A stretch of 63,579 nt of DNA, the filler included, from Olpidium bornovanus S191 (lineage: Eukaryota > Fungi > Olpidiomycota): assembly GCA_017911155.1 (NCBI GenBank). It is 25 parts of 25 records of this genome, joined end to end, with 100 filler letters (N's around TTAATTAATTAA, not from the genome) between each part and the next. Parts side by side here need not be neighbours in the genome. Positions count along the whole stretch, not along the records: positions 31,055 to 36,957 come from JAEFCI010003383.1; 24 more parts are not named here. One strand, 5' to 3'. Below, piece after piece: positions 30,892-37,556 of the stretch (the stretch's first letter is position 1; each line of letters opens with the position of its first letter). A program made the translations under genes and the position numbers. Below the pieces are notes generated by a model, which saw only the letters and a list, made by a program, of their open reading frames with translations, was not told the DNA's origin and did no database searches.

Positions 30892-32885
30892 CTGCACACA
30901 ATTCGAGAAATTGCTATGACGCGGGAGAGGGGACCTGCCCGGTCAACTGCGAAANNNNNNNNNNNNNNNNNNNNNNNNNNNNNNNNNNNNNNNNNNNNTT
31001 AATTAATTAANNNNNNNNNNNNNNNNNNNNNNNNNNNNNNNNNNNNNNNNNNNNCATGATGATCTCTCTGTCCTTGCCGAACTTAGTGAGAGCGGCTTCC
31101 TAGAAGAGCCTGAATTTTTCAAAGCATTCGTCCTTATTGCATAAAAGGTACACATAGGCGAAGCGTGTGGCCTCATCTAAAAAGGTCGCTGCAAAGGAAG
31201 CGCCGCCAAGTGATTTCACAGGAAAACTTAGTAGATCCGAGTGAACCCTATCCAGAGGATTGGTGGTCAGCGTTCCTTCCCGTGACCGAGGTCTTGCCTC
31301 TTTCGTGCCCTTGGCACGGGGGCAGATCGTGCAAGTCTCGCCTGGCTTCAATTCGGGATGTCCCAGACGGGCATGCCAGAGTCCGCTCTCGTGCGTAGTG
31401 GCCAAAACTGTCGCAGTCGCACGTCCATCGGTAACGTCATGCTCACTAACCCCATTGGCTGTGTCGAGCACGTAGAGATTGTTCCGCTGCCGCGTCGCTG
31501 TGGCAAACTCCTTGCCTTTCAGAAAGAGTTGGCAGCGGGATCCGTCGAGCTCTATCCGGACTCCTTTACTCGTTAGCAAGTCAATGGAGAGCAGGTTCCG
31601 TGAGATCCCAGGGACGACGTACACGTCCTCAATCGTTAAGTGACGACCTGACGGCAGCTTGACCCTGGCTCGGCCTTTTGCTTCAGCAGAGAGCACCGCG
31701 TTGTTGCCGACTCGGAGGATTCCCGGTGTCTCTAAAGGACGAACCTCCTGCAGCTCCTCGCCCTTCACAACGATGTGGAAGGAAGCACCCGAGTCGAGCA
31801 CCCAAGTAGAGGTGATGGAGTCTACGAGAAGGGCCACGTCCTCTTCAAGAAGATGGGCCGTATTATCGTCATCGCTCTCTGTCCTTTTGCCTCCGGGCTT
31901 CTCCCGTCCTTTCTGCTGGCTCTTCCCGGACTTGTCCCACTTCTTGCTACGACATTCAGCGGCAAAATGCCCCTTTTTCCCACAGTTGAAGCACGAGCCT
32001 TTCTTCTTCCTGTCAGTGCCCGGCTTCTGCTTGTGGTTTGAATGTGTCAGAAAGGCTTTCTCTCCGCCCGCCTCTTTCTTCCTGCGAAGGTCCGCCTCCC
32101 TAAGTACGGCTATGGTCTCAGCGAGAGTAGGGCGGATCCATTTCCTGGTTTCCCTGTCTCGGTGCCGCTCTCCAGAGCGTCTATGGTTGTCCGGAAGAGG
32201 TGTAAGCATCCCGTCAAGATTATGTCCCGAGTGACTCTAGGCCAGTCGTTCTCCTCGCCGAGATCTATGAGGCGCTGCACTTGCTCCTTGACACGTGCAA
32301 CAAATTTGTCCACACTATTGCTCGAGTCCATGCGCATGGTGTAGAGGTCACGAATTAGGTCAAGCCTGGCGCTGGATCCCACGTCCTCGAAGTTTGCCAC
32401 GAGTGCATCCCATGCGTCCTTGGCACTTTCCGTGCCGTTGAGCAGCTGTTTGTACATGCGCCCGACGTGCAGGTAGAGTTCCCCGTAGGCCTCTCCGTCC
32501 GTCCTTGCCCATTCGCGTTTTTGAGCCTGACTTGCGCCGGACGGGGGCCGGACTTCCTCGCCTGTCACCCAGTCCCACTGCCCACATCGAAGGAGAACTG
32601 CGCGCATATCCTCCTTCCATGAGCTCCAGTTCCCCTCCTCCAAGAGGGGGATGGCAAGGCGTAGTTTGCGCTCGTGGTCCCCCATGCGGCAAAACGGCAA
32701 GGGAGCGAAGTGAATGCTTTGACCCCCCCCCTCCCCCCAAAAAAAAGGGACAAGCGGGGGTTTATTGTGTAACAGTCACTTGCCGGCAGCCCCGCTCCCT
32801 TCACAAAGGGCAGCGAGGGCGGAACGGTCTTCGATAGATGCTTTTATGACTAGCAGTTTCCTCGGCGATTTCCTCCGGCAGCCTG

Positions 32886-33031
32886 CGGCGGCGCGCACAC
32901 TCTCTTTGTGCCGCGCTGGTGCCTCCTTCGTTCCCGCGGCAGCGCGCACGCTCCTTTTGTGCTGCGCTGGTGCCCCTTCGTTCCCGCGGCGGCGCGCACA
33001 CTCCTGTTGTGCTGCGCTGGTGCCCCTTCGT
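32886..33031. repeat. Three 50-51-bp tandem repeats in the copia leader
   Basis: CGGCRGCGCGCACRCTC...GTGCYGCGCTGGTGCCYCTTCGTTC starts at 32886, 32937 and 32987. Confidence 0.9.
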
Positions 33032-33111
33032 TCGACACACGCGCGCGCTCCTCTTGCGCTGCACGATACGGAGATGGTTCTTGGCTTCACGGGCAGGGCG
33101 TCACCATTGAT

Positions 33112-33120
33112 CTCATAACC
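33112..33120 (-). promoter_or_regulatory. Primer-binding site (half-molecule initiator tRNA-Met type)
   Basis: GGTTATGAG immediately after the LTR CA end, as in Ty5 and Drosophila copia PBSs. Confidence 0.8.
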
Positions 33121-33252
33121 TGTTGCGCATCAAAAGTGGGTCGACCGAGGGTCAAACTCGGGACCTTCCTTTTCCTGGAGAGATGCTCTACCAACTGAGC
33201 TATCTGCCCTATTCACCAGGTGTCTGGCTCGTTCTGCTAAGCCATTCCAACA
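33121..33252 (-). repeat. 5' LTR of the minus-strand copia (132 bp, TGTTG...CAACA)
   Basis: Perfect 5-bp terminal inverted repeats. The 3' end (...GCGCAACA) directly abuts the PBS GGTTATGAG. The partner LTR is outside the contig. Confidence 0.8.
33137..33209 (-). tRNA. tRNA-like / pseudo-tRNA inside the LTR (nominal anticodon AGG, identity doubtful)
   Basis: 73 nt: GGGCAGA TA GCTC AGTTGGTA GAGC A TCTCT CCAGGAA AAGGA AGGTC CCGAG TTTGACC CTCGG TCGACCC A, followed by CTTTT. D and T stems are perfect. Acceptor stem has 2 mismatches, anticodon stem is weak, C replaces U33, and the B box reads GTTTGA instead of GTTCGA. Confidence 0.8.
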
Positions 33253-35324
33253 GTCCAAACAAGCCGAAAGGGTACTTTCTTACCAATTCAAGACTCGGGA
33301 AAAGTTACTTTTCAAAATCAAATGGACCAACGGGAGCTCCTCATGGGAAAGCGCGGAGGCCCTGGAACGGTCAGAATTAGTGACAGAATTCCGCCAAGCA
33401 CACAACCTAAAAAAAAACAGTCCCGGCACCAGCCGAGGCGACCGCCATGCGAGCGGATGTCCCCCCGCAATTCCAGGACGAGCCAATGACATACCAAGAG
33501 GCAATCGAGAGAATGGAATTATCGTCATGGCGGGAAGCCATGGCCACCGAGATTTGAACTCTACAAAGCTTCCCTGCATGGGAAATGGTGCCCCGCCCAA
33601 AAGACCATACGGTCCTAAAGGGCAAGTGGGTGTTAAAATGCAAACTCAATTCCGGATGTGAGCGTTAACAAATATCGAGCACGCTTCGTTGCGTAAGGGT
33701 TTCGGCAAGTCAAAGGCATAGACTTTCAGGAGACGCATTCGCCCGTCATTTCAGCAGCAGCACTCCAAACCATCATCGCCATTGCCATCAAGAGGAAATG
33801 GATCATTTGGCAATGTGACATTGTCTTTGCCTACCTCAACGGCGAACTTGCGGAAGACATCTATATGGATCCCGCAGAAGGCCGGGACAACAAACCGGGC
33901 CAGGTTTGCAAGCTGATCAAAGCTTTATACGGCCTAAAGCAAAGTGGGCGAGTTTGGAACCAGAAGTTACACCAATAATTCGTCAAGCTTGGTCTAATAC
34001 AATTACAAATGGAGCCATGAGTGTACGTCCTCAAGAACGAAAGCAGCGTTAAACTGGTTATCGCAATATACGTTGACAACATCGTACTCACATGACCGGA
34101 CGCCACAATCGTCTCGAAAGTTGAGACCATACTCTCGGAGCGGTTCAAAATGTCCGAAGGTAGCGACCTGAGCGTCATCCCGGGAGGGCGAGTCACGAGG
34201 GGTCAAGGTGGATGCTTACTCGACCAACATCACTTCACGATTGAGCTCCTGAAAAAGAAATTTGGGATGCTTGATGATCGGCTGGTTGCCACCCCCGTGG
34301 AAGCTGGCGCGCTGGAGGCACTGACCGCGGAATACGGATCGAGCCAGAACCCGAAGATCGAAAAGGGCTACGCGGAAGCCATCGGATCATTGATGTGCCT
34401 GTCAACCATGACAAGACCCGATCTGGCATTTGTCACGTCTTTCCTGGCACGCTTCATGAGTGCGCCGACTGAAAGGCACTGGGGAGCGATTAAACGAGTT
34501 ATGCGTTACCTTGCTCAAACCATGGATCTCGGCCTGTGGTTCAATGGACCGGACTTGGGCGACAATGAACTCGCAGCATTCAGCGATTCAGACTGGGCGG
34601 GATGTCGCATTACGAGGACATCCACGACCGGGTTAATAATCCAACTCGCGGGAGGCGCGGTATCGCGGAGATCCGCACGGCAAAAATGCGTCTCCCCCTC
34701 CTCATGCGAAGCCGAGTTTGTTGTCGGGTCGGCAGCGGCACAGGAGGTCAAATGGCTTCGCTCCCTCCTCAAGGCAATCAATCCGCAGGGGGTGGTCGGG
34801 CCCACCAGGCTGATGATAGACAACACCGGTGCGGCTGAGTTGGCCTCAGACCTCTAAGATATCCAAAAGGTCCAAACACATAGGCATTCGCTTTCACCAT
34901 CTCCGCTGGTGCACGGCTGACGGGAGCATCATGATCTGCCGCGTTGGAACGGCCGAAAACTTGGCTGATATTTTCACCAAACCAGTGGACCGCTAGAAAT
35001 TCGCCAAATTCCGCGATCAAATCGGCATGCGAGCAAGTATTGGGTGAATCACCTCTGGAAGCGCAAACGAGAAACCGCCTCAAGATTACGGTACCAAAGG
35101 CACTTTGGGGCGATTTATAGAATCTATAGATGACCATGGGCGATAGTGTGCCCAGTGAGGCGGGGTGTTGGAAAGGGGGAGGCATAGTGAAAGGGCACTG
35201 CGCACTCTCCGCCCCTGGACCATAGTCCCCCTTTCCCGTACACATATAGAGTAAACAAAGGCGGCAGAAAAACAGCCCCGGCAGAGCTCCTCCGTACCCT
35301 GAAAAACCGTCTACGTTCTTCACA
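33253..35324 (+). mobile_element. Ty1/copia element, 3' half, decayed (chromo-like segment, RT, RNase H, PPT, 3' LTR)
   Basis: EPMTYQEA...W...KGKWVLK...GFRQVKGIDFQET; CDIVFAYLNGEL; LIKALYGLKQSGRVW; IYVDNI; AFSDSDWAG; PSSCEAEF; IDNTGA; ENLADIFTKP. Many stops and shifts. Confidence 0.95.
35166..35324 (+). repeat. 3' LTR (about 159 bp, TGTTG...TTCACA) preceded by a polypurine tract
   Basis: GAGGCGGGG directly before TGTTGG, about 120 bp after the RNase H stop. The right boundary is approximate. Confidence 0.7.
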
Positions 35325-35827: not shown

Positions 35828-36426
35828 CAAAATTCAGTGGTTCTGACCAACCGCGCGTCCGTCGTCGCGTACGCGTGAACATGACGCGCGCAGTGCAAAA
35901 AAATCGCAAAAAAAGCTTCGCGCGCAAAAAATCGCAAAAAAAAAGATCGGCGCGCGCGCATCCGCAAAAAAAAAGATCCGCGTGTCGCAAAAAAAAGTTT
36001 CGTGAGCAAAAGATCCCAAAAAAAGTTCTGCGCGCGAAAATCGCAAAAAAAAGTTCCGCGCGGACAAAATCGCAAAAAAAGCTTCGCGCGCAAAAAATCA
36101 CAAAAAAAAGATCGGCGCGCGCGCATTCGCAAAAAAAAAAGTTCCGCGTGTCGCAAAAAAAAAGTTGCGCGCGCAAAAGATCCCAAAAAAAGTTCTGCGC
36201 GGGAAAATCGCAAAAAAAAAGTTCCGCGCGGACAAAATCGCAAAAAAAAAGAAATCCGTGCGTCGCAAAAAAAAAAGCTCCGCGCGCAAAAAATCGCAAA
36301 AATCCGGGCACGCGCATCGCCGAAAATCGCAAAAAAAAACTTCACGCGCAAAAAACCGCAAAAAACCACACAAAATCGCAAAAAAGAAGTCTGACAAGGC
36401 GTCAAAATTCAGGGGTTCTGACCAAC
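35828..36426. repeat. A-tract/CG minisatellite (about 27-bp subunits, 166-bp higher-order repeat) bracketed by 24-bp direct repeats
   Basis: Subunit AAAATCGCAAAAAAAGYTYCGCGCG. Higher-order copies start at 35915 and 36081. Flanks are CAAAATTCAGKGGTTCTGACCAAC at 35828 and 36403. Confidence 0.9.
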
Positions 36427-36726
36427 GCAAAAAAAAAGACAGAAAAGGAACTATACGTCAGAAGCGGCAGCAGAAAAAAAAAAACAAAAGAGAGAGAAAG
36501 AGAAAAAGAGAAAGAGAGAAAGAACTTCCCTTACCTTCCTTCCAGCATGGAGCCTTGGCGATGGGGGCCATGGCGGCCATGGCGGCCATGCCGCCAGGGG
36601 TCTTAGGTTCATTCTGGAGGCCTCCAAGCGGCCTACCGAACAAGCCTAAACACAGTCTGGTCTTGTGCCTGTGGGACAAGCTGTGTGGATTGGAAATCAG
36701 CATACATGTTTAAACAGTGCTAAAAG

Positions 36727-36918
36727 TGTTGAGTGTTGTGTGCACGCACAATGCGTTGCCAAACATGTATTATATAGTCTTATTTTCTCTTTCTCGTTTG
36801 AATCCCGGGCTGTTAGTTGGAACCCCATATTGTTGTATGCTGTACTTTACGCGTTTTCTCTCTCTTCTGAATACACCGTCCACCGCGGCGAAACACAAAA
36901 CCGAAAGGTTATGAGCCC
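36727..36918 (+). mobile_element. Probable 5' LTR plus PBS of a third copia (internal part beyond contig end)
   Basis: GGTTATGAGCCC at 36907-36918 is a full Ty5/copia-type PBS. TGTTG at 36727 is the putative LTR start; the LTR end lacks a clean CA. Confidence 0.6.
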
Positions 36919-37556
36919 AAGCGGACTTTGATCTCTTGACGGCCCCCGCAGCTCCTCNNNNNNNNNNNNNNNNNNNNNNNNNNNNNNNNNNNNNNNNNNN
37001 NTTAATTAATTAANNNNNNNNNNNNNNNNNNNNNNNNNNNNNNNNNNNNNNNNNNNNCATGCGGCGGCGGCGAATTCCGCAACTGAACGCGTCATTAGCA
37101 ACCACCGGTCCGTTGACTTGTCAACTCCGCCAGCGCAAACCTCACTCGACGCGTTTGAGGTGCTGTGGTTTTACCCTTTCGCCGCACGCGCGAGAGTGAA
37201 ACAGAGAGAGAAACAGAGAGGAAAAGAGAGAGAAAGAGAGAGAGAGAGAGAGAGCGAGAGAGCGAGAGAGAGAGAGAGCAGGAGAGAGAGCAGAGAGAGA
37301 GGAGGGACTCGCTCGCATTGACGTCATTCATAAGGGAGCCTGGGTGCGGATGGGCGCGTGTTTACTTCTTTTGAGGAGCAAAAAATCACGTGAAAGTCAC
37401 GGGCGGTGGGCTCTTCTCGCAAAGGGTGGCCCCCGCCTTTCCCCCCCCTCCCCCCCCTGCTCCCCCCCCTTCTTTTTCTCCCCGAACCCAACCGACCCAC
37501 CACCACCCAGCCAGCCACCCCGACCGCCCGGGTCAGGGAGAGAGAGAGACAGAGAG

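What the first reader, a model, noticed from the sequence alone, without database searches (positions are those of the whole stretch)
33121..33252. Protein-coding copia element whose LTR contains a complete tRNA-like Pol III unit
Seen in sequence (minus strand): a 132-bp LTR bounded by TGTTG...CAACA contains a 73-nt cloverleaf at 33209-33137. It has perfect D and T stems, an intact A box (TAGCTCAGTTGG), a near-consensus B box (GTTTGACCC, C56 changed to T) and a TTTT run 2 nt after the discriminator. Eleven nt later the LTR ends and is followed directly by the PBS GGTTATGAG, a leader, and gag-PR-IN with only one frameshift and one stop. Established: small-RNA-derived Pol III promoters inside LTRs are known in non-autonomous TRIMs (Cassandra with 5S; Helenus-type with tRNA-like sequence). 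Inference: here such an LTR sits on a coding copia, making it a candidate autonomous partner or ancestor of tRNA-LTR TRIMs, or an element using TFIIIC boxes as promoter or insulator. The arms that form Pol III boxes are conserved while the anticodon and acceptor arms are decayed, which fits a promoter role rather than a translational one.
Basis: partly seen in the sequence, partly recalled or inferred. Interest (0 to 1): 0.82.

Follow-up and report, generated by a model that had tools for sequence, protein, structure and literature searches.

The report
tRNA-like (Helenus-type) LTR on a decayed copia
A 132-bp terminal repeat built around a tRNA-derived RNA polymerase III module, of the kind known so far only from tiny non-coding "Helenus" retrotransposons, here heads a broken protein-coding copia retrotransposon, most likely of an Olpidium-like fungus. 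It may be a hybrid of such a parasite and its helper element, or a rare coding relative.

Summary
Window 33252..33121 (minus strand) is a discrete 132-bp unit, TGTTGG...CAACA. It contains a 73-nt tRNA-like cloverleaf at 33209..33137 (Rfam tRNA 40.4 bits, cut-off 29), then TTTT and 11 more bases. The primer-binding site GGTTATGAG follows directly, then a 426-nt leader and copia gag, CCHC, protease and the start of integrase, with one frameshift and one stop.

The unit is a real LTR family. In the one public run that holds it, contigs stop exactly at 33121 and 33252, and the unit is seen next to the primer-binding site and next to a polypurine tract. An Olpidium bornovanus contig carries its first 68 bases at 95.6% identity.

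Its layout matches fungal Helenus elements (Kojima 2024), which are non-coding by definition. The nearest coding relatives have ordinary 156-bp LTRs without any tRNA.

Pol III starting at the tRNA module would stop at T4 or at a T8 run upstream of gag, so it cannot express the coding part. In the related run the LTR is about 100 times deeper than gag.

I read this copy as a hybrid of a Helenus-type element and its copia helper, or a rare coding progenitor. The element's 3' end lies outside the piece, so the two cannot be told apart.

The parts
33121..33252 (-). Complete 132-bp 5' LTR, TGTTGG...CAACA. Inferred layout: U3 about 43 nt, R = the tRNA-like module through T4, U5 = 11 nt.
   Evidence: The ends are confirmed by contig loose ends at 33121 and 33252/33253 in run X1 and by L003.
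33137..33209 (-). tRNA-derived cloverleaf. A box at 33202..33191. B-box region at 33158..33148 with T56. Anticodon position reads AGG here and GGG in the other copies.
   Evidence: Rfam 40.4 bits. ARAGORN calls it only at relaxed thresholds. Differences in X1 contigs.
33132..33135 (-). T4 run, a candidate weak Pol III terminator and the inferred end of R.
33107..33120 (-). Primer-binding site GGTTATGAGatCAA. Nine bases are perfect. The two bases in lower case differ from GGTTATGAGCCCAA of the relatives. The site is complementary to the anticodon stem-loop of initiator tRNA-Met.
   Evidence: Kojima 2024 text and DataS1.
32686..33106 (-). Leader. It holds three ~50-bp tandem repeats (32874-33024), a conserved hairpin (32777-32831) and a T8 run (32746..32739) followed by a G-rich run.
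32110..32685 (-). copia gag reading frame, ending in a stop after a frameshift zone at about 32161-32116.
   Evidence: Pfam Retrotran_gag_2 E 8e-19. 55.6% identical to gag of P0025.
31055..32209 (-). CCHC knuckle, protease region (Pol_BBD), pre-integrase domain and the start of the integrase core. In-frame stop at 31102-31100. Cut off by the piece's edge.
33253..35165 (+). Older, heavily frameshifted copia fragment into which the minus-strand element is inserted. It has a chromodomain-like stretch at 33260-33400, RT and RNase H from 33477 to about 35014, and a polypurine tract just before 35166.
   Evidence: An X1 contig matches from exactly 33253 onwards and runs on unlike the LTR.
35166..35322 (+). 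157-bp 3' LTR of the plus-strand copia, TGTTGGAA...TTCTTCA, with a TATA-like motif and no tRNA.
   Evidence: In another X1 copy this LTR runs into GGTTATGAGCCCA. No Rfam match.

Best explanation
The 132-bp unit is a complete Helenus-type LTR. It consists of copia-type integrase ends (TGTTGG...CA) around a tRNA-derived Pol III module with A and B boxes and a T4 run.

Here it is the 5' LTR of a decayed copia element. That element is primed from the anticodon loop of initiator tRNA-Met, and it inserted antisense into an older copia.

The LTR family is abundant and mostly flanks short interiors, whereas the coding interior is rare. The closest relatives of the coding interior carry ordinary Pol II-type LTRs.

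The most likely origin of this copy is therefore a hybrid. Reverse transcriptase would have switched templates between a Helenus-type RNA and its helper copia RNA packaged in one particle; the two share the primer-binding site and the start of the leader.

A Pol III transcript starting near 33209 would end at T4 (33135) or, on read-through, at T8 (32746), before gag. So the tRNA module cannot express the coding part. Such a hybrid would be a poor or dead-end replicator, which fits its decay.

Shown: the LTR ends, the tRNA-likeness, the adjacency of LTR to primer-binding site and polypurine tract in other copies, collinearity with tRNA-less relatives, and the T-runs.

Inferred: the U3/R/U5 layout, Pol III use, and the hybrid origin.
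For: -: Rfam tRNA 40.4 bits.
- contigs of run X1 cover 33121-33252 at a summed depth of about 190-300. They have loose ends at both borders.
- three contigs carry ...CTCAAGGGGGGG (a polypurine tract) directly upstream of TGTTGG. One contig runs from the LTR into the 9-nt primer-binding site.
- three joints show LTR, then a short stretch, then LTR in the same orientation. gag depth is 0-1.6.
- an Olpidium bornovanus contig has LTR nt 1-68 at 95.6% identity and the terminal TTTTCGATGCGCAACA, each with unrelated flanks.
- fungal Helenus LTRs start TGTTG(G), carry the tRNA-like part near the 3' end, then TTTT, and end in ...CA. Their interiors start ggttatgagccc.
- the nearest coding relatives, L001 (gag 55.6% identical) and L002, have the same primer-binding site. 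L001 also shares the leader hairpin at 89% identity. Their LTRs have no tRNA.
- T8 in the leader and a T5 run in the coding region.
Against: - Only one coding copy is seen, and its 3' LTR lies outside the piece. It is therefore not shown that both LTRs carry the tRNA module.
- X1 is a different organism or strain, and only contigs could be laid. Interior lengths at the joints are 'not known', and holes in coverage prove nothing.
- Low gag depth in X1 does not measure copy number in the window's own genome.
- The B box has T56, which is expected to weaken TFIIIC binding, so Pol III use is unproven.
- A hybrid origin and a true coding family predict the same local sequence.
Confidence: 0.55

Rival explanations
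1. A true coding copia family whose LTRs carry the tRNA module. It would be the autonomous partner or progenitor from which Helenus-type miniatures arose by internal deletion. Genomic RNA would be made by Pol II, with the tRNA module acting as promoter element, TFIIIC site or processing signal.
For: - The LTR is contiguous with a full copia leader and gag-PR-IN.
- LTRs in this lineage are all tiny, 156-157 bp, so a 132-bp LTR is not out of range.
- In X1 the LTR's neighbours share at least 21 nt (the primer-binding site plus 12 nt) with this leader.
- A low-depth gag-like contig exists in X1.
- Kojima's screen kept only elements under 1000 bp, so coding ones would have been missed.
Against: - No second coding copy was found.
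- There is no TATA-like motif in the 43 nt upstream of the tRNA module, whereas the relatives' LTRs have one.
- No protein at or above 50% identity to the PR-IN piece among 1.84 billion representatives.
- LTR depth is far above gag depth in X1.
Confidence: 0.27
2. Assembly chimera. A high-copy Helenus LTR plus primer-binding site was joined by the assembler to a copia leader through the shared primer-binding site and leader start.
For: The LTR is high-copy. The primer-binding site and the first ~12 nt of leader are shared among families.
Against: The stretch shown to be shared is only about 21 nt, which is short for a mis-join. The leader just after the primer-binding site is still copia-like when aligned with L001.
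Confidence: 0.08
3. A one-off insertion of a tRNA pseudogene or tRNA-derived SINE into an ordinary copia LTR.
For: One X1 contig joins 33135 to 33217, skipping the tRNA module. The matching side is only 24 nt and the letters in between are not known.
Against: The whole 132-bp unit, tRNA module included, recurs with identical ends in X1 (about 10 contigs) and in O. bornovanus. There is no SINE body or tail. Only 43 nt precede and 16 nt follow the tRNA module inside the unit.
Confidence: 0.04
4. A working tRNA gene, or a host tRNA gene that served as an integration target, lying by chance next to a 5'-truncated copia.
For: The Rfam score is above the gathering score.
Against: - ARAGORN rejects it at default thresholds.
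- It has two acceptor mismatches, C33 and T56.
- It lies 15 nt from the primer-binding site inside a TG...CA unit that is itself mobile.
Confidence: 0.02

Closest known systems
Helenus (TRIMp3) of fungi, Kojima 2024, PMC10886601; for example Helenus-2_PTrit and LTR-1_PGr
   Same: The LTR starts TGTTGG(AA). The tRNA-like module lies in the 3' half, followed by TTTT and about 11-25 nt, and the LTR ends in ...CA. [quoted passage not shown] Helenus depends on copia elements. LTR lengths are similar (Helenus LTRs are 116-323 bp).
   Different: - Helenus is by definition shorter than about 1.3 kb and non-coding. This copy carries gag-PR-IN.
- The tRNA-like sequence is unrelated in detail: no shared 10-13-mers beyond the generic D arm.
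- The B box reads AGTTT instead of the GGTTC conserved in Helenus.
- Fungal Helenus was reported from Pucciniales and three Agaricomycetes. The likely host here is Olpidium-like, which is not in Kojima's table.
[quoted passage not shown]
   Same: A copia and a Helenus that share the 5' part of the interior (primer-binding site and leader).
   Different: In that pair the LTRs are not similar, and the author argues that the autonomous partner must keep a Pol II LTR. Here the tRNA-type LTR sits directly on the coding interior.
Cassandra (TRIM with a 5S rRNA module in its LTRs)
   Same: A small-RNA Pol III promoter and terminator inside the LTR. Transcription runs from the 5' LTR module to the 3' LTR module (as summarised in PMC10886601).
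   Different: The module is 5S, not tRNA. Cassandra is found in plants, is non-coding, and has no known coding partner.
Ty5 and Drosophila copia (priming from half a tRNA)
   Same: The primer-binding site is complementary to the anticodon stem-loop of initiator tRNA-Met. Domain order is gag-PR-IN-RT.
   Different: Their LTRs are ordinary Pol II LTRs without any tRNA-derived module.

Membership tests
Helenus / TRIMp3 | The LTR contains a tRNA-derived sequence with A and B boxes | tested here: met
   Rfam tRNA 40.4 bits. The A box TAGCTCAGTTGG fits TRGCY...YGG. The B box deviates: AGTTT against the conserved GGTTC.
Helenus / TRIMp3 | Two LTRs flanking a primer-binding site and a polypurine tract | tested here: inconclusive
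   The 5' LTR plus primer-binding site are in the window. A polypurine tract plus LTR, and LTR-short-LTR joints, are seen only in X1 contigs. The 3' LTR of this copy lies outside the piece.
Helenus / TRIMp3 | Short (under about 1.3 kb) and without coding capacity | tested here: not met
   At least 2.2 kb, with gag, CCHC, PR and IN.
Helenus / TRIMp3 | 5-bp target site duplication (fungal families) | not testable with these tools
   Only the 5' flank (GTCCA on the plus strand at 33253-33257) lies inside the piece.
Ty1/copia (Pseudoviridae) | copia-type gag, CCHC, aspartic protease, and integrase upstream of RT | tested here: met
   Pfam Retrotran_gag_2, zf-CCHC, Pol_BBD and gag_pre-integrs. Collinear with the 1400-aa copia polyprotein P0025 over residues 10-562. 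The RT of this element lies outside the piece.
Ty1/copia (Pseudoviridae) | An intact reading frame (autonomy) | tested here: not met
   One frameshift (32161-32116) and one stop (31102-31100) within 1.6 kb.
Functional tRNA gene | A canonical cloverleaf with paired acceptor and anticodon stems, U33 and C56 | tested here: not met
   ARAGORN at default thresholds finds none. Mismatches at 4:69 and 5:68, plus C33 and T56. The anticodon stem is intact only in other copies.
tRNA-derived SINE | tRNA head plus body plus A-rich or simple-repeat tail, without LTR ends | tested here: not met
   The unit is bounded by TG...CA and adjoins a primer-binding site or polypurine tract. It has no body or tail.

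The most novel reading that the evidence does not exclude
A coding copia lineage in an early-diverging (Olpidium-like) fungus truly uses a 132-bp LTR whose core is a tRNA-derived Pol III module. It would be the first autonomous-type element with a TRIMp3 LTR and the direct progenitor of Helenus-type miniatures. This would overturn the published expectation that helpers must keep Pol II LTRs, and it would raise the question of how a 5-kb genomic RNA is made from such an LTR.
Probability: 0.25. Interest if true: 0.75.

Novelty: new variant of a known kind. Interest (0 to 1): 0.5.

Why it matters
Helenus and Cassandra show that LTR elements can swap their Pol II promoter for a small-RNA Pol III module. 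No coding element with such an LTR is described in the Helenus paper (Kojima 2024), whose screen kept only elements under 1000 bp. That paper argues that helpers cannot share these LTRs.

A physical link between a Helenus-type LTR and a copia gag-pol gives a concrete handle on two open questions. One is how these miniatures arise: by deletion from a coding element, or by recombination with it. The other is which copia lineage mobilises them.

The finding also extends Helenus-type LTRs to a probable Olpidium-like fungus, outside the Pucciniales and Agaricomycetes.

If the copy is only a dead-end hybrid, it is still direct evidence that the parasite RNA and the helper RNA are packaged together and recombine.

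Tried and rejected
- **Exact look-up of the 369-aa PR-IN frame:** not on record.
- **Word search with gag:** no hit.
- **Word search with PR-IN:** best hits only 29-31% identical.
- **Metagenome scans:** the T-arm 21-mer found nothing. A 20-mer from the 5' part of the tRNA module gave one chance hit inside a coding-looking contig with no tRNA, probably bacterial.
- **Viral-contig scans** by protein and by DNA pattern: nothing.
- **Sequencing runs:** only one run, held as contigs and with 4% of the sampled words, could be laid. No raw reads and no RNA were available, so transcript starts could not be tested.
- **Rfam on L001, L002 and L003:** no tRNA.
- **Alignment of the three LTRs in the piece:** nothing shared but the termini, plus a U5-like stretch shared by the two plus-strand LTRs.
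- **Fold of the whole LTR:** not more stable than shuffled sequence, z -0.7.
- **Polypurine-tract-side interior seen in X1:** not found in the window.
- **Considered and rejected:** primer read-through as the source of the tRNA, because it has the wrong strand and lies on the wrong side of the primer-binding site; and a Pol III-made genomic RNA, because of the T8 run in the leader.
- **Not done:** I built no consensus of the copies.

Full report
**1. Observation**

Read on the minus strand, 33252..33121 is TGTTGGAATGG...GATGCGCAACA, 132 bp.

Rfam's tRNA model matches 33209..33137 end to end at 40.4 bits (gathering score 29, E 3.9e-6). It is the only Rfam match in the piece.

ARAGORN calls nothing at default thresholds. 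At 95% thresholds it draws a tRNA-Pro(AGG) cloverleaf with these features:
- perfect D and T stems;
- acceptor mismatches at 4:69 and 5:68;
- one G-U and one C/A pair in the anticodon stem.

The A box (TAGCTCAGTTGG) is canonical. The B-box region reads GAGTTTGACCC, with T at position 56. Position 33 is C.

One C and a T4 run (33135..33132) follow. Then 11 nt complete the unit, and GGTTATGAG (33120..33112) comes next.

Downstream lie:
- a 426-nt leader;
- gag (Pfam Retrotran_gag_2, E 8e-19);
- a CCHC knuckle;
- the protease region (Pol_BBD);
- the pre-integrase domain and the start of the integrase core.

There is one frameshift at about 32161-32116 and one in-frame stop at 31102-31100. The piece ends at 31055, inside integrase.

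**2. Is the 132-bp unit a real LTR?**

Three independent lines fix its ends.

(a) *The one public run that holds part of the stretch* (X1, Logan contigs, organism coded).
- About ten contigs cover 33121-33252 at a summed k-mer depth of 190-300. Neighbouring bins reach at most 24, and most are 0-2.
- Contigs become unlike the window exactly at 33121 and at 33252/33253.
- Three contigs, agreeing at 0.87, carry ...GCCTGGCTCAAGGGGGGG immediately upstream of TGTTGG. This is a polypurine tract followed by a 3' LTR.
- One 137-nt contig runs from the LTR into the nine bases of the primer-binding site.
- Two other contigs have unrelated sequence after CAACA, as a solo LTR or a 3' LTR would.
- Three joints (33252 to 33135, 33251 to 33100, 33231 to 33100) show LTR, then a short stretch, then LTR in the same orientation. 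This is the signature of a miniature element, although the letters in between are 'not known'.

(b) *An Olpidium bornovanus contig.* A search with the spurious reading frame antisense to the LTR gave one hit, a 'hypothetical protein' of the O. bornovanus MAG GCA_017911155.1.
- Its contig L003 carries LTR nt 1-68 at 95.6% identity, preceded by unrelated sequence.
- About 407 bp further on it carries TTTTCGATGCGCAACA, followed by unrelated sequence.
- This also suggests that the window comes from Olpidium or a close relative. That is an inference.

(c) *The plus-strand element.* Directly beyond 33252 begins an older plus-strand copia fragment. An X1 contig matches it from exactly 33253 onwards and runs on unlike the LTR. 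So 33252/33253 is an insertion border.

The tRNA module is part of the repeated unit.

**3. What kind of LTR?**

The fungal families in that paper's DataS1 have this layout:
- LTRs start tgttg(g);
- the tRNA-like part lies near the 3' end;
- it is followed by tttt and about 11-25 nt, ending in ...ca;

The unit here has the same layout.

In detail the tRNA-like sequence is not that of any listed family: only generic D-arm words are shared. This fits the author's view that Helenus arose several times. Olpidium is not among the hosts listed.

Measured against the definition, this copy fails one defining feature. It is neither short nor non-coding.

**4. The coding interior is a normal copia**

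The exhaustive protein search gave as best relatives P0025 (1400 aa, 42% identical to the PR-IN piece) and P0026. Both sit on Logan contigs, L001 and L002.

L001 compared with the window:
- gag is 55.6% identical in protein and 64% in DNA;
- a 55-nt leader hairpin is 89% identical, with the changes keeping the pairs.

L001, L002 and a third element at 36907 on the plus strand all have A|GGTTATGAGCCCAA. The window's element has GGTTATGAGatCAA, followed by a homologous leader start.

Their LTRs are ordinary:
- L001: 156 bp, TGTTGGGATG...GAATA;
- L002: ...GTAACA at the 5' LTR end and TGTAGATG... at the start of the 3' LTR;
- plus-strand element in the window: 157 bp (35166-35322), with a TATA-like motif.

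Rfam finds no tRNA in any of them.

The lineage therefore has tiny LTRs in general. In this element the core of the LTR is replaced by a tRNA-derived module, and everything from the primer-binding site onwards is collinear with tRNA-less relatives.

**5. How it would work**

By analogy with Cassandra (summarised in PMC10886601), R would run from the Pol III start near 33209 to the T4 run. U3 would be the first ~43 nt and U5 the last 11 nt.

From general knowledge of Pol III, T4 is a leaky terminator in fungi. That would allow read-through in the 5' LTR.

On the sense strand, however, a T8 run lies at 32746..32739, before gag. There are further T4 and T5 runs in the coding part. Pol III therefore cannot make the genomic RNA of a coding element, which would need Pol II. 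No TATA-like motif is visible in the 43 nt upstream of the tRNA module.

T56 in the B box is expected to weaken TFIIIC binding. It is not listed as variable among the X1 contigs, so it is probably a family trait.

That argument does not hold. All 7-10 X1 contigs differ from the window at tRNA positions 29, 34 and 40. The differences at positions 29 and 40 turn the G-U and C/A pairs into G-C pairs, giving a perfect anticodon stem. The decay is private to this copy.

**6. Reading**

- *Hybrid (0.55).* In X1 the LTR is about two orders of magnitude deeper than gag (0.9-1.6). Nothing at all was laid on 31055-32236. No close relative of the PR-IN piece exists among 1.84 billion representatives. I therefore favour a hybrid between a Helenus-type miniature and its copia helper, made by template switching between co-packaged RNAs that share the primer-binding site and leader start. 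Such a product would carry Helenus LTRs and a copia interior. It would be poorly transcribed and would decay, as seen here.
- *True coding family (0.27).* This would be a progenitor or partner of the miniatures. It predicts the same local sequence and cannot be excluded, because the source genome was not searchable and the 3' end is outside the piece.
- *Assembly mis-join (0.08).* A join through the ~21 shared bases is possible but unlikely.

**7. Novelty**

This is a new variant of a known kind.

Kojima's screen kept only elements under 1000 bp. The paper explicitly expects helpers to keep Pol II LTRs. A Helenus-type LTR physically joined to gag-pol is therefore not described there, and no later paper using the term TRIMp3 was found.

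The evidence is one broken copy, so interest is moderate.

Noticed in passing
window 33260-33400 (+): A chromodomain-like stretch lies about 25 codons upstream of the RT start of the plus-strand copia, in a different frame. Pfam Chromo gives E 1.1e-4 and 22.5 bits, below the 25.1 cut-off, over profile positions 2-52 of 53. The best PDB match is the CBX1 chromodomain, E 0.026. It starts right at the insertion border 33253. None of the 150 copia relatives has it. Llorens 2009 (PMC2774666) knew chromodomains in Ty1/copia only from diatom CoDi-A. It could be a second copia lineage with a chromo-integrase, or a fragment of another element.
   Followed up: partly
window 35166-35322 (+): 157-bp 3' LTR of the plus-strand copia, preceded by the polypurine tract GAGGCGGGG. 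In X1 the same LTR is abundant (depth about 95-150), and one copy continues ...TTCTTCA|GGTTATGAGCCCA. So this family also primes from the tRNA-iMet anticodon loop.
   Followed up: partly
window 36907-36920 (+), with about 180-370 bp upstream: A third primer-binding site, GGTTATGAGCCCAA, at the piece's edge. An LTR-like stretch with a TATA-like motif (TATTATATAG) precedes it and ends ...ACCGAAA. Its 3' part resembles the U5 side of the 35166-35322 LTR. The LTR start was not determined. X1 contigs cover 36534-36715.
   Followed up: partly
window 35880-36400, flanked by 35828-35851 and 36403-36426: An A-rich minisatellite of ~28-bp units (AAAAAATCGCAAAAAAAGnTnCGCGCGC) lies between two 24-bp direct repeats (CAAAATTCAGKGGTTCTGACCAAC). 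X1 contigs skip 120-711 bp here, so the array length varies between copies or strains.
   Followed up: no
window 32777-32831 (-) and L001 244-298: A 55-nt leader hairpin (GCTGCCCTTTGYGAAGGGAGYGGGGCYGCCGGCAAGTG) is 89% identical between two copia families whose gag DNA is only 64% identical. Base changes keep the pairs. Its depth in X1 is 24, against 1-2 in the neighbouring bins. It is a candidate packaging or dimerisation signal, which miniatures might also carry.
   Followed up: partly
window 32874-33024 (-): Three ~50-bp tandem repeats in the leader between the primer-binding site and the hairpin. The leader of L001 also contains repeated GC-rich units.
   Followed up: no
L003 325-744 (Olpidium bornovanus JAEFCI010001832.1): The annotated 'hypothetical protein BJ554DRAFT_4230' is read antisense across the tRNA-like LTR (motif LYQLSYLPYSPGVWL) and is probably not a gene. 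In this copy the LTR is split after tRNA position 25 by about 407 bp.
   Followed up: partly
window 33135/33217 joint in X1: One contig joins the two flanks of the tRNA module, skipping 81 bp. The matching side is 24 nt and the letters in between are not known. It may be an LTR variant without the tRNA part, or with a very different one.
   Followed up: no
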